Of a stretch of 64,000 nucleotides of DNA, positions 7,403 through 47,337 are shown piece by piece (position 1 is the first letter of the stretch; the number at the start of each line of letters is the position of its first letter). Origin of the DNA: Octopus sinensis (lineage: Eukaryota). The translations under genes and the position numbers were made by a program. The notes under the pieces are model-generated. The model worked only from the letters and a program-made list of their open reading frames with translations, had not been told where the DNA came from and ran no database searches. The DNA is taken from positions 57,784,001 through 57,848,000 of the forward strand of contig NC_043010.1 of assembly GCF_006345805.1 (NCBI RefSeq), given 5' to 3'.

Positions 7403-7631
7403 TTCACACTAACAAACATAAACTATTCAGGAGATAAAGTAGTCTATATATCTTATTAGATGCTGAAGTTTCTTGGCTTGTAAGTCTGAGTGTCATGTTC
7501 CCATTTGTTGTAACTTTTGATGATGAGGAGCAGCAAGACAAACTATAAACAAAAATGTTTGAAATCACATCAATATATGATTGGTTTGCAGTGCATCAAG
7601 AATTGATTGTTTTTAAAATATATCTCAACAA

Positions 7632-8656
7632 CCTCCTATTTATCATAGTCCTCCAGGCAATAACGGAGGAATTCAAGACAGGTTGCCCCTGGGAGCTCCT
7701 CTATGCTGATGACCTTGCTCTAATTGCTGAGTCACTATCAGAACTGGAGGAGAAGTTTCAGGTGTGGAAACAAGGATTAGAATCGAAGGGCCTTAGAATC
7801 AACCTAGCCAAAACCAAAGTCCTAATAAGTAGGAAGGTAGATCAATCACAAACGCCTTCAGGTAGATGGCCCTGCTCGATCTGTAAAAAAGGTGTAGGTA
7901 GAAACTCTATAAGATGCACCAAGTGTAAGCTATGGACACATAAGAGGTGCAGCAATGTCAAAGGAAGGCTAACTAGGAAAATAGTTTTTTGTCTGTGGCA
8001 AATGCTCAGGAGCAATAAACACTGGAAATGTGCAGAGACCAACTTCTGCCACGTTCCAGGGAGACAAACTAGAAGTAGTTGATAGCTTCCGCTACCTAGG
8101 AGACCAAGTCAGTAGCGGGGGTGGGTGTGCTGAAAGTGTAACTGCTAGAGTAAGAATAGCCTGGGCAAAGTTTAGAGAGCTCTTACCCCTGCTGGTGACA
8201 AAAGGCCTCTCGCTCAGAGTAAAAGGCAGACTGTATGATGCATGTGTACGTACAGCCATGCTACATGGTAGTGAAACATGGGCCGTGACTGCTGAGGATA
8301 TGCGTAAGCTCGCAAGAAATGAAGCCAGTATGCTCCGATGGATGTGTAATGTCAGTGTTCATAGTCGACATAGTGTAAGTTCCTTGAGAGAAAAGTTGAA
8401 CCTAAGAAGCGTCAGTTGTGGTGTGCAAGAGAGACGGCTGCGCTGGTATGGTCATGTGACGAGAAAGGCTGAAGATAGTTGTGTGCAAAAGTGCTACACC
8501 CTAGCAGTTGAGGGAACCTGTGGAAGAGGTAGACCCAGGAAAACCTGGGACGAGGTGGTGAAGCACGACCTTCGAACTTTAGGTCTCACTAAGGAAATGT
8601 CTAGAGACCGAGACCTATGGAAGTATGCTGTGCGTGAGAAGACCCGGCAAGACTAG
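7632..8656 (+). pseudogene. 5'-truncated RTE-clade LINE reverse transcriptase ORF (C-terminal half), one frameshift
   Basis: LLFIIVLQ...WELLYADDL...GLRINLAKTKVL...VDSFRYLG...RLRWYGHV...GRGRPRKTW; frames joined by a +1 T in the run at 7985-7990; stop TAG 8654-8656. Confidence 0.92.
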
Positions 8657-21708: not shown

Positions 21709-22365
21709 CTTAAATGATTGACGGTTTGAATATTGTGACTTGTACTTGCTCATTTTCATATTTTGGGGTTTATAATGATGTGAGTGTATTCTAATGCATA
21801 ACATAAGGGATCTCAAGAAACATTATCCGGTTCCATTTAAATATTAATGGTGTTGCAAAACATGTAAATAGAGCAAAATATATTTACATTCAATGTTTAC
21901 ACTCGGCAAGAGCAGTAAATTGGTGAAATTATTAAGGCACCAAAAGAAAATAATTTGTGATATTTGATGCAGTCTGAGTTCAAATCAAATCAAGGTCAAT
22001 ATTGCCCTTTATCCCCCCTGGGTCAATTCAGTAAAATACCAGTCAAATAACTGGGTTGGTCACATAAACTAACCTCTCCCACAAACTTCTCTGTTTTGTT
22101 CTCTGATAACAAATATCATTTGCTCTTCACTTCTCCCTATTCTGTAACTGTAACATGTTTGGTCCCTTAACGAAACAACAACAATAACGATGTTGTCTTA
22201 CAGTGTTCATTTAACAATTTGTATTCTGCCCAAATTGATGTGAATTATGTAACATGAAATAAAATATACCATTTAATTAGTGTATCTAAATTGATTGTGA
22301 GGTTAACAAGATCACAAGTTCAACAGAGTTGGGGTTTTCATATTTGTCTGTCTATTTGTGTTTTT

Positions 22366-24456
22366 GAGGGTGTTTGGAAATGCCACTATGAAAGGTTACT
22401 AAATGAAGAGAATGAATGGGAGGAGGAGAGTCTACTAAATGTTGACCCAATTGAGGGACAAGCTACCCGAATCGACAGTTCCTTGGTAGATAAAGCAATT
22501 AAGGATATGAAGACGGGGAAAGCCCCTGACCCATCAAGAATCACTGCTGAGATGCTTAAAATATCTGGCTGTGTGGGTAATGGTCTTGTCACCCATATTG
22601 TAAATCAGGTGATTCATGAAGGAGTCATACCCAATGACTGGTGCAGCAGCACTAAAGTCATATGCTACAAAGGTGAAGGTGATACCTTAAATAGAAATAA
22701 TTACAGAGGGATCAAACTGTTGGATCAGGTGATGAAAGTTATGGAGAGGGTCATAGCCCAACTAATTAGGGAGAGAGTTAGTTTAGATGAGGTGCAGTTA
22801 GGTTTTGTGTTGGGAAGAAGCACCACTGATGCTATATTTCTGGTAAGGCAGCTGCAGGAGAAATATCTAGCCAAAGATAAACCTATGTCAACTTTTGTTG
22901 ACCTGGTCAATGTAGAAACTAGGGATAGACAAGCGGTTGGTGAGAGTTGTACAGGGACACTACCAGTAAGGTGAGGGTTGGCAATGAGTACAGGGAAGAA
23001 TTCAAGGTACAAGTTGGGGTTCACCAAGAATTGGTCCTCAGCCCCCTCTTGTTCATCATAGTCCTCCAGGTGATGACAGAGGAATTTAAGACATGCTGCT
23101 CCTGGGAGTTCCTCTATGCTGATGACTTTGTTCTTATAGCTGAATCACTGCCAGAACTAGAGAAAAAGTTCCAGGTATGGAAGCAAGGTCTAGAATCAAA
23201 GGACCTTAGGGTTAACCTAGCAAAAACCAAAGTCTTAGTGAGTAGGAAGGCAGACAAATCACAAATCCCTTCAGGTAGATGGTCCTGCTCAATCTATAGA
23301 AGAGGCTTAGGTAGAAACTCCATAAGATGTACCTGGGCACATAAGTTGTGCAGCAATATCAGAGGAAGGTTAACAGGGAAAAAAGCTTTTGTGTGTAGAA
23401 GATGCACAGGTACAATAAACACTGAAAATGTACAGAAAATGGACTCCATCAACTGCCAGTGGGGTAAGCTAGAGTTTGTAGATAGCTTCCATTATCTAGG
23501 TGACCAAGTTAGCAGCAGAGGTGGATACCCAGAGAGTGTAGCTGATAGAATAAGAATAGGCTGGGCAAAGTTCAGAGAGCTCCTACCTCTACTGGCAACA
23601 AAAGGCCTCTCTCTCAGAGTGAAAGGCAAATTGTATGCAGTATGTATGTGAACATGGGCTGTGACAGCTGAGGACATGCATAAGTTTGAAAGAAATGAAG
23701 CTAGTATGCTTCACTGGGTGCCAGTGTGCATGTATGACAGAGTGTAAGCATCTTAAGAGAAAAGTTGGGCATAAGAGACATCAGATGTGGTGTGCAAGAG
23801 ACACAATACTGCACTGGAATGGTCATGTGATGCATATGGACGAGGACAGCTGTGTAAAGAAGTGCTGATCTCTAACTGTGGAGGGAACCTGTGGTAGAGG
23901 TAGACCCAGGAAGACATGGGATGAAGTGGTGAAGCATGATCTTTGAACTTTGAGCCTCACAGAGGCAATGACTAATGACCGAGACCTTTGGCGATATGCT
24001 GTGCATGAGAAGACCCGTCAAGCCAAGTGAAATCGTAGTCATGACTGATGCTGGTGTCATGCAACTGGCACCCATGCCAGTGGCACATAAAAAGCACCTT
24101 TCAAGCGTTGGGCCTCATGGAGGGAAAGTGGCATGTGAAAAGCTCCTTTCAAGTGTTGGTCCTCACGAAGGCAATGAGCAAGATCTTTGGCATTATGTCA
24201 TGCTTGAGAAGAAGAGCCATCAAGCCAAGTAAAATCGGAGTCATAGCAGATATCGGTGTCACGCAAATGGCACCTGTGCCAGTGGCATGTAAAAGCACCG
24301 ATTGCATTCTCAGAGTGTCTGACGTTAGGAAGGGCATCCAGCCATAGAAACCATGCCAAAACAGACTGGAGTCTGGTACAGCTTTCCAGCTTGCCAGCCC
24401 TGGGCAAACTGTCCAGCCCATGCCAGCATGGACAATGGATGCTAAATGATGATGAT
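22366..24456 (+). pseudogene. 5'-truncated, decayed RTE-clade LINE (RT domain to (GAT)n tail)
   Basis: WKCHYERLLNEENEW...KGEGDTLNRNNYRGIKLL...QLGFVLGRSTTDAIF...LSPLLFIIVL...FLYADDF...FHYLGD; several frameshifts and stops; terminal module at 24290-24456. Confidence 0.92.
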
Positions 24457-26836: not shown

Positions 26837-27816
26837 ATGATATATAAGTATATCTGTGTGTGCGTGTGTGTATGCATCTCTATGTTTGTTTACAATTGCA
26901 TTTCTCTAAAACTCTCCCAGCTCCAAGTGATGACACTGCTGTCATTTCTCCTGTCATCAAAACCCTTGCTGGTTTTGGACCTTTGAAGATGTTTGCAATA
27001 AGAGAGCCCTTACTTGAAAAACAGATAAGGGCTAACAATAGGGATGGCATCTGACTGTAAAACAAAGCCATGTTGATATATTTGTCTAACTCATACTAGT
27101 ATAGAAAAACAGGTGTAAAACGGACAAATCATTATCTCTCTCTCACTCTCTCTCTCTCACTCTCTCTCTCTCCTCTCTCTCTCTCTCTTTCTCCATATAT
27201 ATTTGTATGTATATGTTTGAATTTGCATAACTACGTGTTGCTGTGTTCTATAGAAACATCAAATTTTAATCTAAGATTTCAGACAGAAATACAAAATTTG
27301 CAGAGCATGGATTTCTTTGAACAAAATATATATTCCTAAAATGTATTTTCTGTTCACCTGAAAGTCTACAGGGAATATATAAATAATCATATATTTCTAC
27401 AGATTTTCTATAAAATTTAGAACCAACATTGAAAGTTACAACATTTCATGCGATTGAAGACAGAAAAATAGGTGATTGGCGTATATACACATTTCAGAGA
27501 TCTTTGCCCCTTCCTCAGTACCATGTTCAACCCATTAACTATCCTTGAACACATTGCTTTAAGAGCCACTAAATATGGCAGGAATGTGTTTAATATAGAA
27601 ATAACTAATGGTGTACATATGTTCACTTCATAGTGAACAAGATATATATTTCTAATGGTGTACATTAGTTCATCTCAAAATGAACATAACTTATATTCCT
27701 GGCAGTGTACATATATTCCATGCCCCATGATATGCCCTGATCACACATTCAGCTCTGCACACTCAACTGGATGTTTCTGTGCTACTGACAACAAAATTTG
27801 AACCTGAGTCTCTTAC

Positions 27817-30207
27817 CTGTGGTGTTCTCTGGGACCATCTGGACAATGATGATGATTTCCATTCATTTCGTGATTCGTCCACTGGATAGAGCTGTCCATG
27901 CATCGATAATGAGCTGCCTCCCATTATGTCATCCGGGTTACACGACACAGGGACTGTGTTGTTAGACTGAGAGATGAGTTGCCTCATTTCGTTCCTTGGG
28001 TGTTTTGAGGCTGATATGGCCGTGTGTTGCAAGGCTCTGTTCTGGTTTCGAGTTCTAATCACACACAGGGTGACAGAAATAACAATCACCACTGATAGAA
28101 CGACAGCCACTGGGACAATGATAACGACCCAGGTCACATCGATTAAACTGTCCGATTGTTGGTGGACTGCAGCCAACATTGGTGAGGTGGTGTTGCTAAC
28201 ACTTAATGAGAGAGTTAAGGTTGTTGCGGCTGATAAAGATGGCATGCCACTGTCTTTTACCATAAACTTTAGGTCGTATGTTCCTGCATCGTTTTGGTAA
28301 ACAGTCCGAGAGAAAGAAAGAACTCCTGTATAAGGGTTCACAGTAAATAGATGTTTGTCATTGCCTCCAATAATTTCGTATTTAAGGAAAGCATTTTCTT
28401 GGTTGTCCCTGTCGGAGGCCTTCAGTACTGTGAGGTCATTCTTACTCTGTGGATGGTAATAAAAGTCCAAACTAAAAGGGTCCACACTTGGAAAGGTGAA
28501 ATAAGGGGCATTATCGTTTTCATCGACCACCTTAACAATAATGTTTGCTGTGCTGTTTAACGGTGGTGTTCCATTGTCTTTAACAAAAACCTTAAATTTG
28601 TAGACTTCTTGTTGTTCCCTGTCTAAAGACGACTTGGTTGATATGAATCCATAATTTGTTATTTGGAAAGGAATGTCATTTGTGTCGGTGCCCAGTAGGA
28701 AATAAGTCAACTGACCCCCAAGTTCCAGATCGGGGTCAGTGGCATTGATAAAACCAACAGGAAAATTGGATTTTTCATTCTCATAGGTGAGGAACTTGAA
28801 TGTATCTTTGGTAAACTGGGGTTTTACATCATTCACATCTGTCACTCGGATGGAGAACCTGTTTTCAGCCCTTAACGGTGGAGAGCCTCGATCACTGCAT
28901 TTTATAACAATATCATAATGGTCTTCTTTCTCTCGATCAACTGAATTCTTCACAATCACTTTATATTCCTTGAAACCAAAATTCAGAAGCTGGAATTTGT
29001 CATGCTGTAGCTCACAGTTGACCTCTCCATTCAGTCCCATGTCGTTATCAGTGACCATTACATAAGCAAGGAAACTCCCAGCTTCAATGTCTTCGGAGAT
29101 CGATGCCACATTCTCTGTCAATGTGAACACAAAATCCACTTCAATGTTGGGCGCATTGTTTTGTTGGTTCATAACATTTACTAAAACAATGGCTGTTGAA
29201 CTTAGCGGAGGCTCCCCTCCATCAGTTGCATCAACAAATAATTTATAAACCACCTTCTGACCCACGGGAAATATCTTTTTTAATAAAATCTCTCCGGTAG
29301 TTTTATTCAATTCAAAATGACTTTTAGCTTCATCTGAAGTTTTGGGGCTAAAATGGTAGAGAATTTTGCTGTTTTCCCCTGCATCCAGGTCCTTGGCAGC
29401 CAATACCACAACTGGCAGTGACATCTGGTGGGTGTTTTTAATGGAAACATTATACATTTGATGTGAAAACACTGGTGGATTGTCATTGACATCGTTCACT
29501 GCAATTTGAACATTTAAAACACTTTGCATTGGTAAAGAACCACCGTCTTTGGCAACGATTTGTAACATGTAGGTGTCCTTTTCCTCACGATTCAGTTTCC
29601 CTTCTAAAATAATGGCCAAATTAGCTCTACCATCAATTCTTTTAAAGACAGACAGAGAAAACAACCGATTGTTGTTATTCCGAAGTTGGTAGGTGATCTG
29701 AGAGTTTAGAATTCCAACATCTTTATCAATGGCATTTGGTACCGATATCTTGGAACCTTTACCGTCTCTCTCAGAAAATTGGATATTCACTTGTTTGACA
29801 GGGAATTGAGGAACGTGGTCGTTTATGTCCTGAATAATTACTTTGATTTTTAGAATTTTCATGAATTTGTTTGCTTTTCTCACAGCAACTTTAACAATTC
29901 TGAAACATTCCTTGTTGTAAATACACAGAGTTTCGGCATCCAGCGCCTGAGCCGTGAATAGTTTACCATTACTGCTCACATTGAATAACTGACTAATGCT
30001 GTTTGAGCCCCTTCGTTGGAGTTGACTGAATGTGATGAAGGGGACATGTTCAGGGACCACCCTGTCTGATAAATGGGAGTCTGCAGCGATGTTCCCAATG
30101 TATGAACCAATTGCTTTCTCTTCCTTCACGTGATAAATCAAGTTCGATGCGGAGTATTTCGGAAGAAAAAATAAAATTAGAAATCCAAACCGCAGAAGTC
30201 TCCCCAT
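27817..30207 (-). CDS. Protocadherin, large first coding exon (signal peptide, EC1-EC6, TM, proximal cytoplasmic tail)
   Basis: MGRLLRFGFLILFFLPKYSAS signal peptide; cadherin motifs LDAETLC..C, DINDHVPQF, DVNDNPPVF, DREKED, DENDNAPYF; TM VTWVVIIVPVAVVLSVVIVISVTLCVI; 797 codons to a phase-0 CAG|GTAAGA donor. The unspliced read-through stops at 27763 (814 aa). Confidence 0.95.
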
Positions 30208-30273
30208 ATTTCTGTTGGTGCCTGGTGGTTGATAATGCAATTTGGTGGTTGATCCCAATTTAGTAGAAACAGT

Positions 30274-31338: not shown

Positions 31339-31723
31339 GGTGTAGGAGTGGCTGTGTGGTAAGTAGCTTGCTTACTAACCACATGGTTCCGGGTTCACTC
31401 CCACTGCGTGGCACCTTCGGCAAGTGTCTTCTATTATAGCCTCAGGCCTACCAAAGCCTTGTGAGTGGATTTGGTAGATGGAAACTGAAAGAAGCCCGTC
31501 GTATATATGTATACATATATGTGTGTGTGTATATGTTTGTGTGTCTGTGTTTGTCCCCCCAACGATGCTGGTGTGTTTACGTGACCGTAACATAGCGGTT
31601 TGGCAAAAGAGACCGATAGAATAAGTACTAGGCTTACAAAGAATAAGTCATGGGGTCGATTTGCTTGACTAAAGGTGGTGCTCCAGCATGGCCACAGTCA
31701 AATGACTGAAACAAGTAAAAGAG

Positions 31724-31724
<1 letters not shown>
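31339..31724 (+). mobile_element. Full-length tRNA-derived SINE family B
   Basis: GGAGTGGCTGTGTGG head, GGTTCACTCC box B, CORE-like GGCACCTTCGGCAAGTGTC, internal (TA/GT)n, tail GACTGAAACAAGTAAAAGAG. Confidence 0.88.
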
Positions 31725-32100
<376 letters not shown>

Positions 32101-32767
32101 GATATATATGCATATACATGCATACATATATTCATATCTGCACAGCTTGATGTAAGAGAGAGAGAGATACAATAGACAGAGCAAACACACAGACACCCCG
32201 CACACGCATTGCATGCTGCAGCCGCTACAGACACACAGACACAGCAGCCCCACCACCACCACGCATCTCACACGCACGTTGTACCGACAACACTCACGGC
32301 AAACACACAGACACAGCACACACGCAAACTGCACACACGCATTGTTATGAAGAAAAATTTGCTAGAGTTGCTTCCCTTGGACCACTTTGTCCCGTTCTGC
32401 CTCGGTCCTATGTCAGCGTCATAATAAGGTGATGAGGTGGAGAAGGATTGTTCCCTACCAGTTATTAGGAACGATAGAGAATGTAGTGAGCCTTTCTTTC
32501 GGGCATTCATGTTGTCTCAATATATTCCTTACCCAGGAAATATCCTCCATCGTTGATAAATATTCAATCAGAACAAAAAGCAAGTCAAACCATTGATTGT
32601 CAAATTGATAAATTAATTCTAACCCACCCCCACCCCCCGATAACTACAAAATTCCCATCCCCCACCGTCACTTCTCTATCAAAGAAAATGCATAACACAC
32701 TTTGCACGAAAATAATTCTTCTTTCTTCGCCAAAACCATCTCAAGTTTATTAAACAACATGGTTTCT

Positions 32768-32911
32768 TCATTATTTACATTTAACGGATATTTGTCCTCA
32801 TCTTGTTTGTTGTTACCACTAACGTTTCGGCTGATGTACCCTCCAGCCTTCATCAGGTGTCTTGGGGAAATTTCGAACCTGGGTTCTCATTCCTAAGGTA
32901 TTTTGTTGTTG

Positions 32912-32952
<41 letters not shown>
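32768..32952 (-). mobile_element. HHR-bearing SINE family D, 3' part (core-intact hammerhead)
   Basis: Minus strand GACAC-CTGATGA-A-GGCTG-GAGGGTACAT-CAGCC-GAAA-CG-TT; its 5' continuation is at 33361-33391, beyond a SINE B insertion. Confidence 0.8.
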
Positions 32953-33360
32953 GTTACTCATTCTCATTTACTCATTTACTCATTTACTTGTTTCAGTCAT
33001 TTGACTGCGGCCATGCTGGAGCACCGCCTTTAGTCGAGCAAATCGACCCCGGGACTTATTCTTTGTAAGCCCAGTACTTATTCTATCGGTCTCTTTTGCC
33101 GAACCGCTAAGTGATGGGGACGTAAACACACCAGCATCGGTTGTCAAGCAATGCTAGGGGAACAAACACAGACACACAAACATATACACACACACTTATA
33201 TATATATATACATATATACGACAGGCTTCTTTCAGTTTCCGTCTACCAAATCCACTCACAAGGCATTGGTCGGCCCGGGGCTATAGCAGAAGACACTTGC
33301 CCAAGGTGCCACGCAGTGGGACTGAACCCGGAACTATGTGGTTGGTTAGCAAGTTACTTA
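32953..33360 (-). mobile_element. SINE family B inserted into the (AAT)n tract of a family D copy
   Basis: Reverse complement of 31339-31724, missing about 15 nt at the 5' end; flanked by D-family sequence on both sides. Confidence 0.85.
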
Positions 33361-33397
33361 ATTATCATAATTATTCAGGTCACTGCCTGGATGCTTG

Positions 33398-33663
33398 TGG
33401 GCCTATGGCATAGTGGTTAAAATCGCAGCTACTAACCCCAAGATTCTGAGTTTGATTCCAGGCAGTGATCTGAATAATAATAATAATAACATCGAAAAGT
33501 ACCTTAGGAATGAGAACCCAGGTTCAGAATTTCTCCAAGACACCCAAGGAAGGCTGGAGGATATATCAGCCAAAATTTTGGGTTAACAACAAACAAGATG
33601 AGGACAAATATCCATCAAATGTAAAAAATGTACATAATTCCTCATCTCTTAAATATAGAACTA
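33398..33663 (+). mobile_element. HHR-bearing tRNA-derived SINE family D (full length, core decayed)
   Basis: TGGCATAGTGG box A, CT-ACT-AA anticodon-like loop, GAGTTTGATTCC box B, (AAT)n, then GACAC-CCAAGGA-AGGCTG..CAGCC-AAAA. Confidence 0.8.
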
Positions 33664-34444
33664 AACATGGTTTCTCCCCCGCACACCACCCAACTTCTTA
33701 ATCGTCACAAATCTCACCACCCACCTTACTCTATCACAAACACTAGATGGAACAACAGCTAAATACCCGTCTATTCCCCCCCCCACCACCACCATGCATA
33801 AAAGACATTTGGGTATTTAGTTTCGTCCTTTTACGTTTTGAGCTTAATTTTAGAGGTCCACCAAATAAAGTACCAAAGTCCGTGTAATTGTTACTTTTAG
33901 GTGTCCCTGGTTACTTCTGATATTGGCTGACAATACTAAGGAAATCTTTGTAGTCTTTGCTTACTCTGTAAGGGCTGAGATGTTGTAAACTCCCAATGGC
34001 CAAAATTATGGTTCTGTGAAGAACAGTGACCCAGATCTGAATAACTGTGGCAGATACAGAGATTGGTCAATGCCATTCAGGGTCAGTAACTGATGTGATG
34101 TGTTGGTCATCATACATGACAGATGTGAACAAAAGAAGACATTGAAGCTTATGAATGCACACTTCCAGAATTAGGCCCAGTGAATTTAAAGATCATTTGG
34201 GGAAGCCATGGTTGGGTTGGAAGCCAAACTTTCTTTTAGAAATTAGTTGTCTTTGTTTCTTCAGCAAATAATCTTGGAGTTGTTCCTTAACTGTTGGTTC
34301 CATTCCTTTGCTTCAAATTTTGGCACAAGGCCAGCAGTGTCAGGGGAGGGGACAAGTCCCACGGTCAACTCATGTATGTATTTCATCATTTCCAAAAGGA
34401 CGAATGGCAAAGTCTACCTTGGCAGCATTTGAACTCGGAACAGA

Positions 34445-38340: not shown

Positions 38341-39258
38341 CATCATCATCATCATTTAGCGTCCGCTTTCCATGCTAGCATGGGTTGGACGGTTCAACTG
38401 GGGTCTGGGAAGCCAGAAGGCTGCACCAGGCCCAGTCTGATCTGGCAATGTTTCTACGGCTGGATGCCCTTCCTAACGTCAACCACTCCATGACTGTAGT
38501 GGGTGCTTTTTACGTGCCACCAGCACAGGTGCCACATGAGGCTGGCAAACGGCCATGATCGGAGGTGCTTTTTACGTGTCACCGGCATGGGGGCCAGGCA
38601 AGGCTGGCAACGGCCATGATTGGATGGTGCTTTATATGTGCCACCGGCACTGGTATCACAGCTACAATTTCCATTGATGTTGATCTATTTCGATTTTGAT
38701 TCTGATTCTCACTTGCCTCAACAGGTCTTTACAAGTAGAGTTTTTGTCCCAAGAAAGAAAGGTATGCGTAAGTGGACTGGCTACATCCCAGGTAGAGGCC
38801 ACGGGTTATGATCTCACTTGTCCTGCCGGGTCTTCTCACACACAGCATACTTCCATAGGTCTTGGTCTCTAGTCATTTCCTCGGTGAGACCTAAAGTTTG
38901 AAGGTCGTGCTTCACCATCTCATCCCAGGTTTTACTGGGTCTACCTCTTCCACAGGTTCCATCAACCGCTAGGGTGTGGCCCTTTTTCACACAACTATCT
39001 TCATTCATTCTTGCCACATGACCATACCAGAGCAAACGTCTCTGTTGCACACCACAACTGATGCTTCTTAGGTCCAACTTTTCTCTCAAGGCACTTACAC
39101 TCTGTCGAGTATGAACACTGACATTACACATCCATCGGAGCTTACACATATCCTCAGCAGAGCTTGCGAGCTTACACATATCCTCAGCAGTGACGGCCCA
39201 TGTTTCACTCCCATGTAGCATGGCTGTTCATACACATGCGTCATACAGTCTGCCTTTT
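38341..39258 (-). pseudogene. 5'-truncated RTE LINE (ORF C-terminus, 3' UTR, tail)
   Basis: KGRLYDACV...MLHGSETWAVTAEDM...LLWYGHV...GRGRPSKTW...VCEKTRQDK; (CAT)n at 38341; (TA)n at the 5' junction. Confidence 0.92.
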
Positions 39259-41762: not shown

Positions 41763-41989
41763 GTGTGAAAAGGTTGAATGTAGATTCATCCTTTAATTTG
41801 GAGGATTCCAAAAACGATGTCTAATAAAGATTCTTCATATTTTGCTGGTAGCTGACTGGCTTAAGTTTGCGAATATGAAAATAATACTTGTATATGCTGT
41901 GTTATGTAAGAGTGACCCAACCATGAAAAGTTGCTTCTAGGTCAGGATGGGGTGTCACAAACGAAAGTCAACATTTGGAAGCAAAAATT

Positions 41990-42202
41990 AGTTTTCAATT
42001 TTGGCACAAGGCCAGCAATTTCAGGGAGGGGATAAGTTGATTAAATTGACCCCGATGCACAATTGGTACTTATTCTATTGACCCTGACAGGATGAAAAGC
42101 AAAGCTACCTTTGGTGGAATTTGAACCCAGAGCATAAAATCAAACAAAATACTGCTAAACATTTTGCCTGGCATGCTAACAATTCTGCTCAGTTGCCACC
42201 TT
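41990..42202 (-). mobile_element. SINE family C, near full length
   Basis: Minus strand GGTGGCAACTGAGCAGAATTGTTAGCATGCCAGG head...GGTTCAAATTCC box B...GCTGGCCTTGTGCC. Confidence 0.75.
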
Positions 42203-44102
42203 AATTGGAAGCAAATATTGGCAGCCACCAGTGGGAGGAGTGAACATGAGGTGCAGGAGGGGCGATGTAGTGTTGGTAGTAAATATCTATGTATGTATAT
42301 ATATATGTATGTATATATATATATATGAAAAGCTGTTATGTCATTACGATGCAGCAATGTCCACTCTCATATTGTGTCATATTGCGGTTAACAGCTTCTT
42401 GTGTTGGTTTTAGTCATTACTTCTTCATTTGAAGTCCACAATATTTGGTAGGCCTTAAGTGAAGACCACAATGGCCACACTAATATCTATTTCACTTTCC
42501 ATATCTTTTTATTAACCCAAAATGCTTATATCTGTATTTTCAACATGTATTTATATCTACATGTGTACAGATCTATATTTAAAGTAACAACATACATGAT
42601 AGATTGAAATCATCTGTGATGCAACATGTTTGATAATATTAATATGAATGTGTTTCATAAGCAGAAAGAATGGGGATAGCAGCATATACGGAATGTGTGT
42701 GTGTGTGTGTGTGGCTGATTCGATATTATAGCAGACGGTTGTCAAACATGTCACAAGCACGTGCAGTCACTAAAAGTAAAAGAGAGCAAGAGACCAATTC
42801 ACTGAGCAAAGCAACATAGTTCTATGTAGATTGTTGAGTGGCTCTGCTTTGAGGTTGCATTTGCCAGCTTTTTATAACTGTAAGCAAAAGTTTTCTAGAA
42901 CCTTCAACCATGCTGTTTAGTGGGAACACTCACTCACTTCTTTTTAAGTTTACCACATCATCCATAACAAATCAGCCAACGTTGATTGGTTGAACCACAT
43001 TCAAATCAGTGCTAATGTCTTTTATGGTAACACATAGGCTTTACTTTTGCTATAGTGGGCTGTGGGTATGAGCAGGGAAAATCTGAGGGTAAAAGTCAGC
43101 TGAAGCTTCTCTAGACCCTGTGAATTTGAGCTCCTGGGGCTTTCCCCTCGCTTCCCATCTGGCTCTGGCCATGCCTGCCACCTGGAATTTGTATACTCTT
43201 CTTTCAAAGAGAAGATATTTTCAATAAATCAAGATTTTATCTTGTATGTTATTTAATAGACCTTTATTGTCCACATCCCAGCCACTGACCACTGACCACT
43301 GGTCACTCTCAGTTCAAGGATCTTTAATCCCGTTCCATGATCAATAATTGCAAGGGAGACTAGTCCAACTTTTGGTTATAAGGAATCCTCAGTCTGGCCC
43401 CTCTCCCTGCTTCTTTCTCATTAATTGACCCCATAATGAAAAATAGATCAAAGGTGGTGGGGTGGCTGTATGGATGGAAGGTTAGGGAGGAGCAGTAAGA
43501 GGTAGCAAGTGGGGTAGAAGGAGGAGGAGATTTTAGTGTAAAGGAGGAGGAAAAGTTAGTTAGGGAGTGGAGAGTAGGTGTTGAGGGTGGAGGAGAGGGG
43601 GTGGAGGAGATTAAAGTGAAGGGAGAGGAGATAGTTGTAAGAAGTAGCAGAAAAAGAGAGGAGAGAAAAAGTCCCTGGAGAGCAGGAAGAAGGCAGGAGC
43701 AGAGTGTGGTGGGGTTTCTAATCACTGCAGGGTTAAGCAGTGGTGGTGGTGGTGATGGTGGTGGTAGTGATATACTATGATGATGATGATGATGTGTACT
43801 AGTAGTGGTGGTGGTTTAGAGTGGTATGGATAGAGCATGATGATGATGGTGTACCAGTGGTGGTGGTGGTGAGTGAAACTATGCGCTATAGAGCCTGAAT
43901 AGTATAGTTAACAGTTAATCATTTATGATTAACTGATTAATTAAGGTAATTAGTGGGGGGAGTGAACATAAGGTGGAGGAGGTGGATGAGTGTTGGTAAT
44001 AAATATCTACAGTATTACACATATAAATATAAGTGTATGTATATATATTCTGTGTATATGACACGGTTGTATATAAGTACTGAGATATACGCTCATACAC
44101 AA

Positions 44103-46618: not shown

Positions 46619-46880
46619 CAGGCATATGGCATAATGGTTAAGAGCACGGGCTACTAACCCCAAGATTCCGATTCCAAGCAGTGACCTGAATAATAATAAT
46701 AATAATAATAACAATAATAACAACATCGAAAAATACCTTAGGAATGAAATTTCCTCAAGACACCAGAAGAAGGTTGGAGGGTATATCAGCCAAAACGTGT
46801 TAACATCAAACAAGATGAGGACAAATATCCGTCAAATGTAAATAATGTACATAATTCCTCATTTCTTAAATATTGAACTG
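46619..46880 (+). mobile_element. HHR-bearing tRNA-derived SINE family D (full length, core decayed)
   Basis: Same head-(AAT)n-body layout as 33398; GACAC-CAGAAGA-AGGTTG..CAGCC-AAAACG. Confidence 0.8.
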
Positions 46881-47337
46881 ACATTCATCTGGTTTGATAT
46901 TATTGACGATTATTTGTCCAGTTCCATTAGGATTTTGAAGAACATGTGGCACCATAAATGGTAAAGATATCATAAGGCATGTCAGAATATCTTGGTTTTA
47001 CAACAAAGATGCAGCATGTGGGAAACATTATTAATTCTTTTATTATCAGAACGGGGGGGGGGGGGGCTTTGGATGGTGTAGCGATTTGCGAGTTTATTGA
47101 ATTATACATCTTAAACAAAGGACTTCATTGAGATAACAACTGGGCTATTTCATCCAATATCATTGAGGTTCAGATTAAAACAAAATTATAAAGAAGAAGC
47201 TGAATCCACACTTTTTAAGAAGTAAGGCTTTTAATTAATGTAATAGCAAATAGATATCTAACCAAATGTCTTAGAAGTCACTTTTGATTACGAGACATGC
47301 AACAATAAACTCTGTAGAAAGCAAAGGAAAAACTTGG

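What the first reader, a model, noticed from the sequence alone, without database searches (positions are those of the whole stretch)
32756..33675. Head-to-head dimer of the ribozyme SINE inside one 12-bp direct repeat
AACATGGTTTCT occurs at 32756-32767 and 33664-33675, each within 1 nt of a family D 3' end. Between them lie D(-) (later split by SINE B at its (AAT)n and 5'-truncated near box B), a 6-nt spacer, then full-length D(+). A single TSD around two outward-facing 3' ends suggests one event in which both nicked strands primed reverse transcription on separate or re-used templates. This differs from L1 twin priming, where the inverted part is non-overlapping, and recalls the inverted terminal arrangements of Penelope-like elements. 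The copies differ by roughly 10%, so the event is not recent.
Basis: partly seen in the sequence, partly recalled or inferred. Interest (0 to 1): 0.72.

Follow-up and report, generated by a model that had tools for sequence, protein, structure and literature searches.

The report
Inverted SINE pair from one Penelope-style insertion
Two copies of a rare ribozyme-carrying octopus SINE sit head to head inside one 12-bp target duplication, with the layout typical of Penelope-like retroelement insertions, so this is a clean small example of a known integration style, not a new mechanism.

Summary
The window is Octopus sinensis DNA, 2.5 kb upstream of a protocadherin gene. AACATGGTTTCT occurs exactly twice, at the two outer ends of a head-to-head pair of family D copies. 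D(+) is full length. D(-) is 5'-truncated at box B. A 6-nt filler separates them.

O. vulgaris carries the same pair without SINE B. The pair therefore predates the species split and SINE B arrived later.

One correction: D(-) stops 33 nt short of the 3' end shared by D(+) and the solo copy D3.

That asymmetry points to the mechanism. D carries a minimal type-I hammerhead motif with the published hallmarks of Penelope-like element (PLE) ribozymes. An HMMER search found about 80 related ORFs. They end at one of two 3' positions about 25-30 nt apart. At least 8 contain antisense-to-sense head-to-head junctions, and many are tandem.

Published PLE work describes the same layout: an inverted 5'-truncated copy at the 5' end, an optional 30-40 bp tail at one end, variable TSDs, and a protein that nicks and extends both strands from two internal start sites.

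Best reading: a single PLE-type integration of a non-autonomous tRNA-headed SINE. The empty site and the autonomous partner were not found.

The parts
32756..32767 (+). Left copy of the 12-bp target-site duplication, AACATGGTTTCT
   Evidence: Exact match. O. vulgaris has AACATGGCTTCT here.
32768..32768 (.). Single filler nucleotide (T) between the TSD and the D(-) end. It matches neither the D consensus nor the target.
   Evidence: Alignments.
32769..32952 (-). D(-) 3' segment: tail-less outer end (...AAATGTAAATAATG), hammerhead motif at 32816-32861, and the internal (AAT)n, read as (ATT)n on the + strand
   Evidence: blastn (86% to D(+)).
32953..33359 (-). SINE B, a later unrelated insertion into the microsatellite of D(-). 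It is not part of the event.
   Evidence: Absent from the O. vulgaris ortholog. It is an abundant family.
33360..33392 (-). D(-) 5' remnant, truncated at the box B remnant (ATCCAGGCAGTG...). It lacks about 50 nt of the tRNA-like head.
33393..33398 (.). 6-nt centre filler GCTTGT between the two 5' ends
   Evidence: Identical in O. vulgaris. Origin unknown.
33399..33663 (+). D(+), full length: box A 33406-33416, box B 33448-33462, (AAT)n 33473-33489, decayed hammerhead motif 33539-33584, 33-nt tail 33631-33663
33631..33663 (+). The 'tail': 33 nt present at the D(+) outer end and absent from the D(-) outer end
   Evidence: Family-wide tailed versus tail-less ends.
33664..33675 (+). Right copy of the 12-bp target-site duplication
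   Evidence: Intact in O. vulgaris.
46621..46881 (+). D3, the only other D copy in the window: solo, full length, tailed. Used as the family reference.

Best explanation
Family D is a non-autonomous retroelement. It has a tRNA-like pol III head (boxes A and B), an (AAT)n stretch, and one roughly 130-nt unit of a Penelope-like-element (PLE) hammerhead repeat.

The locus records one PLE-type integration.
1. A PLE endonuclease/reverse transcriptase encoded elsewhere nicked both strands 12 bp apart at AACATGGTTTCT.
2. The bottom-strand 3'-OH primed reverse transcription of a D RNA from the distal start site. [quoted passage not shown]
3. The top-strand 3'-OH primed reverse transcription of a D RNA (the same or another molecule) from the proximal, tail-less start region. 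This stopped at box B and gave the inverted, 5'-truncated D(-).
4. The two cDNAs were joined head to head with 6 nt of filler. Gap repair duplicated the 12-bp target.

Shown: the anatomy, the single TSD, the one-sided tail, the PLE-type ribozyme motif, the pair predating the O. sinensis/O. vulgaris split, the later arrival of SINE B, and the family-wide recurrence of two 3' ends and of head-to-head pairs.

Inferred: that a PLE enzyme did it, that both strands primed within one event, and which RNA(s) served as template.
For: Structure
- There is a single exact 12-bp direct repeat at the two outer ends.
- D(+) is full length and D(-) is 5'-truncated. They meet 5' to 5'.
- The outer ends differ by a 33-nt tail that D(+), D3 and P0127 carry and D(-) lacks.

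Ribozyme motif
- The inferred ancestral D(-) reads GACAC-CUGAUGA-A-GGCUG..CAGCC-GAA-ACGU-U-GUGUU.
- It also has a 5-bp helix I.

Family-wide evidence
- HMMER with the ORF frame of the D 3' module found 85 hits, about 80 of them genuine.
- Their homology stops at two alternative positions..NVNNVNN| or ..KYRT| in D-type ORFs, and ..TLNDKN| or ..KFRQ| in a sister type.
- This was checked at DNA level in L006.
- At least 8 of these ORFs run from antisense into sense copies, i.e. head to head.
- One was confirmed in DNA: L009, arms 819-715 and 821-1007.
- At least 16 are tandem.

Literature
- PLE insertions often have an inverted 5'-truncated copy at the 5' end and a 30-40 bp tail at only one end (PMC8557442). 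They also have variable TSDs (same paper).
- A purified PLE protein cleaves and extends both strands. It starts reverse transcription at two internal sites, and the sequence between them is the tail (PMC11167929).

Density and age
- D is sparse, so adjacency by chance is unlikely.
- At the species split the arms differed at 7 of 133 sites, all transitions. This fits decay from near-identical templates.
Against: - No empty orthologous site was seen. O. vulgaris is too close and shares the pair. The O. bimaculoides site lies in an assembly gap.
- No autonomous PLE carrying this hammerhead unit was found in about 380 kb of octopus DNA or among the protein hits.
- Rfam reports no hammerhead here, even at E<=10. 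The motif was assigned by inspection against a published descriptor, and no activity was tested.
- The D(-) end is 8-9 nt inside the common tail-less end, not at it.
- The second head-to-head pair (L009) has no recognisable TSD and both its arms are tailed.
- The family-wide evidence is at protein level, from ORFs of unnamed sequencing runs.
Confidence: 0.68

Rival explanations
1. One event, but by snap-back. [quoted passage not shown] The inverted arm was then joined to the upstream target end.
For: This gives the same map: a TSD, a full-length sense arm, a centre filler and an inverted arm that starts inside the element. At the species split the arms differed only by 7 transitions in 133 sites, which is compatible with identical arms at birth. 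In the second pair, L009, both arms are truncated at almost the same position, only 5 nt apart with a 4-nt spacer. That looks hairpin-like.
Against: In this model the outer end of D(-) is where synthesis happened to stop. It would have no reason to fall in the narrow region that relatives use as the tail-less 3' end. The arms share no private substitutions relative to D3. They differ from each other at 7 sites and from D3 at 5 each. In vitro, the PLE protein extends both strands directly (PMC11167929).
Confidence: 0.13
2. A longer read-through RNA was retrotransposed. At the source locus it already contained an inverted D fragment upstream of a D copy. The left boundary is then an ordinary 5' truncation.
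For: It explains a single TSD, an intact D(+) 3' end and an arbitrary-looking end inside D(-).
Against: It only moves the origin of the inverted pair to another locus. D has a pol III-type head, so its transcripts should start at D itself. The truncation point would fall within 10 nt of the family's alternative 3' end only about 1 time in 10-20 by chance. No second copy of the junction was found in 380 kb.
Confidence: 0.06
3. Two independent insertions. D(+) inserted first and made the 12-bp TSD. D(-) later landed exactly between the left TSD copy and the D(+) 5' end.
For: The centre filler GCTTGT resembles the end of the TSD (GTTTCT) at 4 of 6 positions. It could be read as a decayed short TSD of a second insertion.
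Against: This needs a second hit within a few nucleotides by a family with about 1 copy per 75 kb here. D(-) would be both 3'- and 5'-truncated. The filler is identical in both species, and 2 changes in 6 nt is too much decay for the age of the pair.
Confidence: 0.04
4. LINE-type twin priming (L1-like) acting in trans on SINE RNA, with no PLE involved.
For: Twin priming gives TSD-flanked 5' inversions (PMC2912911). LINE reverse-transcriptase fragments are present in the window.
Against: Twin priming uses one RNA and gives non-overlapping parts. Here the arms overlap by about 190 nt. Only one 5'-inverted Alu was found in that human-chimpanzee survey, where most Alu insertions were full length. 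By contrast, about 8 of 80 ORFs in this family are head to head. D has no poly(A) or LINE-like tail, and no LINE in the window shares its 3' end. The hammerhead and the tail dimorphism are PLE traits.
Confidence: 0.04

Closest known systems
Insertion architecture of Penelope-like elements (Penelope/Poseidon, Neptune, Naiad and others)
   Same: An inverted 5'-truncated copy abuts the 5' end of a fuller copy. An optional tail of roughly 30 bp is present at only one end of the unit. TSD length is variable. A minimal hammerhead lies in the terminal module. Relatives form partial tandems (PMC8557442; PMC11167929; PMC4209133).
   Different: There is no RT/GIY-YIG ORF. The element is 265 nt long with a tRNA-like pol III head and an internal (AAT)n. 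At this locus there is no tandem or pLTR. The tail is 33 nt at this locus and about 25 nt in relatives, against the 30-40 bp quoted for PLEs.
Sm-alpha / Sj-alpha, SINE-like retroposons of schistosomes that carry a hammerhead ribozyme
   Same: A short non-autonomous element that combines pol III-type promoter boxes with a type-I hammerhead.
   Different: The schistosome hammerhead is the canonical, efficient type I. D has the minimal PLE-type motif with a palindromic helix III. The host is an octopus. I know of no report of TSD-flanked inverted dimers for Sm-alpha.
Animal non-LTR retrozymes (tandem type-I hammerhead repeats), recently argued to be non-autonomous PLE derivatives (PMC7229834; bioRxiv 10.64898/2026.07.22.740005)
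   Same: The unit from the hammerhead to the tail end of D (about 130 nt) is homologous to units that occur as 43-codon tandem repeats in relatives.
   Different: D is dispersed and single-unit, has a tRNA-like head and is bounded by a TSD. Nothing here bears on circular RNA.
L1 twin priming (Ostertag and Kazazian 2001, from my own knowledge; summarised in PMC2912911)
   Same: Both target strands prime, and the result is an inverted 5' part within one TSD.
   Different: The arms overlap almost fully instead of being complementary parts of one RNA. There is filler at the junction instead of microhomology. There is no poly(A).

Membership tests
Penelope-like element (autonomous) | ORF with a telomerase-like RT and a GIY-YIG endonuclease | tested here: not met
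   The pair is 512 nt without SINE B and has only short ORFs. The protein searches returned no RT or endonuclease proteins. D is not itself a PLE. At most it depends on one.
PLE-type insertion (what it works like) | Inverted 5'-truncated copy immediately adjacent to the 5' end of a fuller copy | tested here: met
   D(-) 32769-33392 is truncated at box B. D(+) 33399-33663 is full length. They are 6 nt apart. The arrangement recurs in relatives.
PLE-type insertion (what it works like) | Optional extension of roughly 30-40 bp ('tail') at only one end of the unit, reflecting two reverse-transcription start sites | tested here: met
   A 33-nt tail is present at the D(+) end only. Relatives show two classes of 3' end. 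Caveats: the D(-) end is 8-9 nt off the common tail-less end, and the family tail is about 25 nt.
PLE-type insertion (what it works like) | [quoted passage not shown] | tested here: met
   Read from the sequence of D(-) in O. sinensis and O. vulgaris and compared with PMC4209133. Each living copy has at least one defect. Rfam models do not detect it. Cleavage was not tested.
PLE-type insertion (what it works like) | 3' module shared with an autonomous PLE of the same genome | tested here: inconclusive
   No match in about 380 kb of octopus DNA or among 85 HMMER hits. The whole genome could not be searched.
PLE-type insertion (what it works like) | Target-site duplication of variable length | tested here: met
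   A 12-bp exact repeat. This is compatible but not diagnostic (PMC8557442).
tRNA-derived SINE | Internal pol III boxes A and B at tRNA-like spacing | tested here: met
   Box A, TGGCATAGTGG (33406-33416), fits TRGCNNAGTGG. Box B is GAGTTTGATTCC (GAGTTCGATTCC in O. vulgaris), 42 nt downstream. By inspection only.
tRNA-derived SINE | Head recognisable as a tRNA | tested here: not met
   ARAGORN finds no tRNA in the window. Rfam gives no tRNA match, even at E<=10.
tRNA-derived SINE | LINE-derived 3' tail or A-rich or simple-repeat tail | tested here: not met
   The 3' end is the hammerhead unit plus the tail. There is no poly(A) and no similarity to the LINE fragments in the window.
L1-type twin priming | The inverted and direct parts are non-overlapping segments of one RNA, joined with microhomology | tested here: not met
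   The arms overlap over D positions of about 60-232. The junction has 6 nt of filler.
Non-LTR retrozyme | Tandem repeats of a hammerhead-bearing unit that give circular RNA | tested here: not met
   There is a single unit per copy at this locus. Tandem arrays are seen only in sister-type relatives. Circular RNA is not testable here.

The most novel reading that the evidence does not exclude
tRNA-headed SINEs whose 3' module is one PLE hammerhead unit form a widespread, so far undescribed SINE class in octopods and probably other molluscs. They are mobilised by PLE enzymes. Their small TSD-bounded inverted dimers with a one-sided tail would be natural in vivo records of the both-strand, two-start-site priming that has so far been seen only in vitro for an Anolis PLE.
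Probability: 0.45. Interest if true: 0.65.

Novelty: new member of a known kind. Interest (0 to 1): 0.5.

Why it matters
How PLEs integrate is still poorly understood. Their tandem and inverted structures and their 'tail' are usually buried in multi-kilobase, badly assembled insertions, and TSDs are often unreadable because the elements land in microsatellites.

This example is 0.5 kb long and fully sequenced, with an unambiguous 12-bp TSD, one tailed end, one tail-less end and a defined centre junction. It is present in two species. It therefore shows the products of both priming events of a single integration.

If a genome-wide census confirms it, this SINE family would give many such records. 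That would allow start-site choice, filler and truncation to be measured in vivo. It would also add PLEs to the list of enzymes known to drive tRNA-headed SINEs.

Tried and rejected
- **Rfam.** Gathering thresholds on the whole window, and E<=10 on 32700-33720, gave no hammerhead and no tRNA. ARAGORN found no tRNA.
- **A longer direct repeat.** I considered extending the repeat to 29 nt at 72% identity (repeat finder D11). Rejected: the right-hand part is the D tail, which D3 shares.
- **O. bimaculoides empty site.** The ortholog was fetched (L001), but alignment stops at window 32631, at a 1336-N gap. It resumes only at window 41985.
- **O. vulgaris.** It shares the pair, so it says nothing about the empty site.
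- **More D copies from other O. sinensis loci.** L003-L005 (163 kb) contain none. Four contig look-ups were wasted on non-longest isoforms or on a gene that was too long.
- **Word-indexed protein search with the D ORF.** One hit only, P0127. The exhaustive HMMER search worked instead.
- **TSDs elsewhere.** Solo copy D3 shares only a 5-mer between its flanks. The second inverted pair, L009, has none.
- **The 9-bp stem in the 3' module.** AGAUGAGGA pairs with UCCUCAUCU and encloses the tail-less end. It is predicted, but the fold z-score is only -1.6 and there are no compensatory changes. I do not use it as evidence.
- **LINE reverse-transcriptase fragments in the window.** They hit Pfam RVT_1 only and bear no relation to D.

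Full report
**Where we are.** The 831-codon ORF at 27763-30258(-) is 100% identical to Octopus sinensis protocadherin gamma-A11 (P0001). The window is therefore O. sinensis DNA. The finding lies about 2.5 kb upstream of that gene's start codon.

**The observation.**
- AACATGGTTTCT occurs exactly at 32756-32767 and 33664-33675 and nowhere else in the window.
- blastn with the right-hand element finds only three family D copies in 64 kb: D(-), D(+) and a solo copy D3 at 46621-46881.
- The map, in order:
  - TSD 32756-32767
  - one filler T, 32768
  - D(-) 32769-32952
  - SINE B(-) 32953-33359, inside the (ATT)n of D(-)
  - D(-) remnant 33360-33392, ending in the box B remnant
  - filler GCTTGT 33393-33398
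  - D(+) 33399-33663
  - TSD 33664-33675
- D(+) begins where D3 begins and ends GAACT+A, 1 nt from the TSD.
- The arms are 87.4% identical over the shared 135-nt 3' module.

**The one correction.** D(-) does not reach the 3' end that D(+) and D3 share. It stops at ...AAATGTAAATAATG, 33 nt earlier.

**Orthologs.** I reached orthologous loci through the protocadherin cluster members.
- O. vulgaris (L002) has the same D(-)/filler/D(+) arrangement and both 12-mers. The left one carries one substitution. The 407-bp SINE B is absent. The pair therefore predates the O. sinensis/O. vulgaris split, and SINE B entered later in the O. sinensis lineage.
- In O. bimaculoides (L001) the alignment stops at window 32631, at the edge of a 1336-N assembly gap. 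It resumes only at window 41985. The empty site could not be examined.
- Parsimony ancestors at the species split differ between the arms at 7 of 133 sites, all transitions.
- Orthologous copies differ by 3-10% today. If the arms were born alike, the event is roughly twice as old as the species split and younger than the split from O. bimaculoides. An empty site is therefore predicted there.

**What D is.**
- The head has a box A (TGGCATAGTGG) and a box B (GAGTT[T/C]GATTCC) at tRNA-like spacing. Neither ARAGORN nor Rfam recognises a tRNA.
- After an (AAT)n stretch comes a hammerhead-like motif. Rfam does not report it.
- Read directly, the inferred ancestral D(-) is GACAC-CUGAUGA-A-GGCUG(loop)CAGCC-GAA-ACGU-U-GUGUU. 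I took the helix II state from O. sinensis and the helix I state from O. vulgaris. Each state is shared with other copies.
- Helix I and helix II form in the minimum-free-energy fold.
- The extra nucleotide after A9, the G10.1-C11.1 pair and the palindromic ACGU in place of helix III are three of the four features that Cervera and de la Pena give as evidence that the minimal hammerheads of Penelope-like elements are genuine. Those ribozymes act as dimers (PMC4209133).
- All living copies have decayed at one or more core positions.

**The family.**
- The frame that is open from ATGAGAACC through the D 3' end gave one word-indexed hit, an O. bimaculoides mini-protein that includes the tail (P0127).
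- An exhaustive HMMER search gave 85 hits, about 80 of them genuine (sequences). Most come from Logan assemblies of unnamed runs. Contig L009 ends in SINE-B-like sequence, so those runs are from an octopod.
- The hits fall into two types:
  - a D-type (..KYPSNVNNVHNSSSLKYRT);
  - a sister type (QTPEEGWRTYRPKRCGNNNKDEDNSPKTLNDKNHQASSQKFRQ). The sister type is often tandem with a 43-codon period. It is often preceded by a peptide (MANGIRTGDP..) that could encode a box-B-like TTCGAA motif, but no DNA was examined.
- Mapping where homology stops shows two classes of 3' end in both types.
  - About 13 D-type ORFs end at ..NVNNVNN| and about 10 end at ..KYRT|.
  - About 10 sister-type ORFs end at ..TLNDKN| and about 35 end at ..KFRQ|.
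  - After these points the sequences become unrelated to one another.
- The DNA of one tail-less copy ends ...GTAAATAAT|ATTTTAC (L006). The window's D(-) end lies 8-9 nt inside that position.
- At least eight ORFs read from an antisense copy straight into a sense copy, i.e. head to head: P0128, P0129, P0142, P0156, P0173, P0184, P0191 and P0193.
- P0129 was checked in DNA. The antisense arm is L009 819-715 and the sense arm is 821-1007. Both arms are tailed and both are 5'-truncated. No TSD is recognisable there.

**Comparison with what is known.**
- Craig et al. describe PLE insertions as highly 5'-truncated and often partially tandem.
[quoted passage not shown] - Their TSDs vary in length (PMC8557442).
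- Frangieh et al. showed that a purified Anolis PLE protein cleaves and extends both DNA strands. It starts reverse transcription at two internal sites without homology to the target, and the tail is the sequence between the two sites (PMC11167929).
- The locus matches point by point: a fuller copy with the tail, an inverted 5'-truncated copy without it, one TSD, and filler rather than microhomology at the junctions.
- L1 twin priming uses one RNA and gives non-overlapping parts. It is nearly absent for Alu: one 5'-inverted Alu was found in a human-chimpanzee survey in which most Alu insertions were full length (PMC2912911).

**Mechanism and rivals.**
- I favour priming from both nicked strands within one PLE-type event.
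- A snap-back of a single cDNA gives the same map and cannot be excluded. However, it makes the outer end of D(-) a stopping point. It does not explain why that end falls in the narrow region that relatives use as a 3' end.
- A read-through chimeric RNA only moves the problem to a source locus.
- Two independent insertions would need a sparse family to hit the same few nucleotides twice. D has 3 copies in 64 kb and none in another 163 kb, against 8-36 SINE B hits per locus. They would also leave D(-) truncated at both ends.
- Weak points:
  - No empty site was seen.
  - No autonomous PLE with this unit was found.
  - The ribozyme call rests on inspection.
  - The family statistics come from ORFs of unnamed runs.

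**Verdict.** Its single error, the claim that the two ends are equivalent, turns out to be the most informative point. The integration style is already known for PLEs. What is new is that a small tRNA-headed, hammerhead-bearing octopus SINE shows it in a fully readable, TSD-bounded form.

Noticed in passing
window 32953-33359: This SINE B copy is absent from the orthologous O. vulgaris site. It is therefore an insertion specific to the O. sinensis lineage, and the family was active after the species split. SINE B is abundant, with 8 hits in the window and 36 in L004.
   Followed up: partly
window 27763-30258 (-): A single-exon ORF of 831 codons that is 100% identical to O. sinensis protocadherin gamma-A11. 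The D pair lies about 2.5 kb upstream of its start codon, in possible promoter territory.
   Followed up: partly
L001 6824-8159 (O. bimaculoides CM046614.1): A 1336-N assembly gap sits exactly where the ortholog of the D pair should be. Beyond the gap, L001 aligns to window 41985-44018. About 9 kb of the O. sinensis sequence is therefore either missing or unassembled in O. bimaculoides.
   Followed up: partly
P0139 (O. bimaculoides XP_052825882.1, 'dystrobrevin beta isoform X1', 94 aa): This annotated gene product contains a D-derived stretch (EGWRVYQPKCCVNNKQDEDKYPS). It is either an exonised D copy or a mis-annotated gene model.
   Followed up: no
P0128, P0132, P0134, P0136, P0142, P0151, P0152, P0168, P0173-P0175, P0185, P0199, P0210: Sister-type hammerhead units occur as tandem arrays with a 43-codon (129-nt) period, like animal non-LTR retrozymes or PLE pLTR tandems. 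One array lies on a 267-kb ENA contig of unknown species.
   Followed up: partly
window 33596-33604 and 33639-33647 (also in D3): A 9-bp inverted repeat, AGATGAGGA / TCCTCATCT, brackets the tail-less end. Its 3' strand lies in the tail. D3 keeps the pairs through G-U changes, but the fold is not significant (z = -1.6).
   Followed up: partly
window 33490-33630 versus L002 25480-25622: The D(+) orthologs differ at 13 of 135 sites between O. sinensis and O. vulgaris. That is two to three times the figure for D(-) (6 of 135) or D3 (4 of 118). Several of the changes lie in the hammerhead core.
   Followed up: no
window 31724-32131: A 408-bp (TA)n microsatellite lies just upstream of the locus. An inverted SINE B copy at 31563-31736 pairs with the one inside D(-).
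   Followed up: no
window 7555-8656, 22291-23651, 38814-39221: Fragments of a LINE reverse transcriptase (Pfam RVT_1) with broken reading frames. They are unrelated to D.
   Followed up: partly
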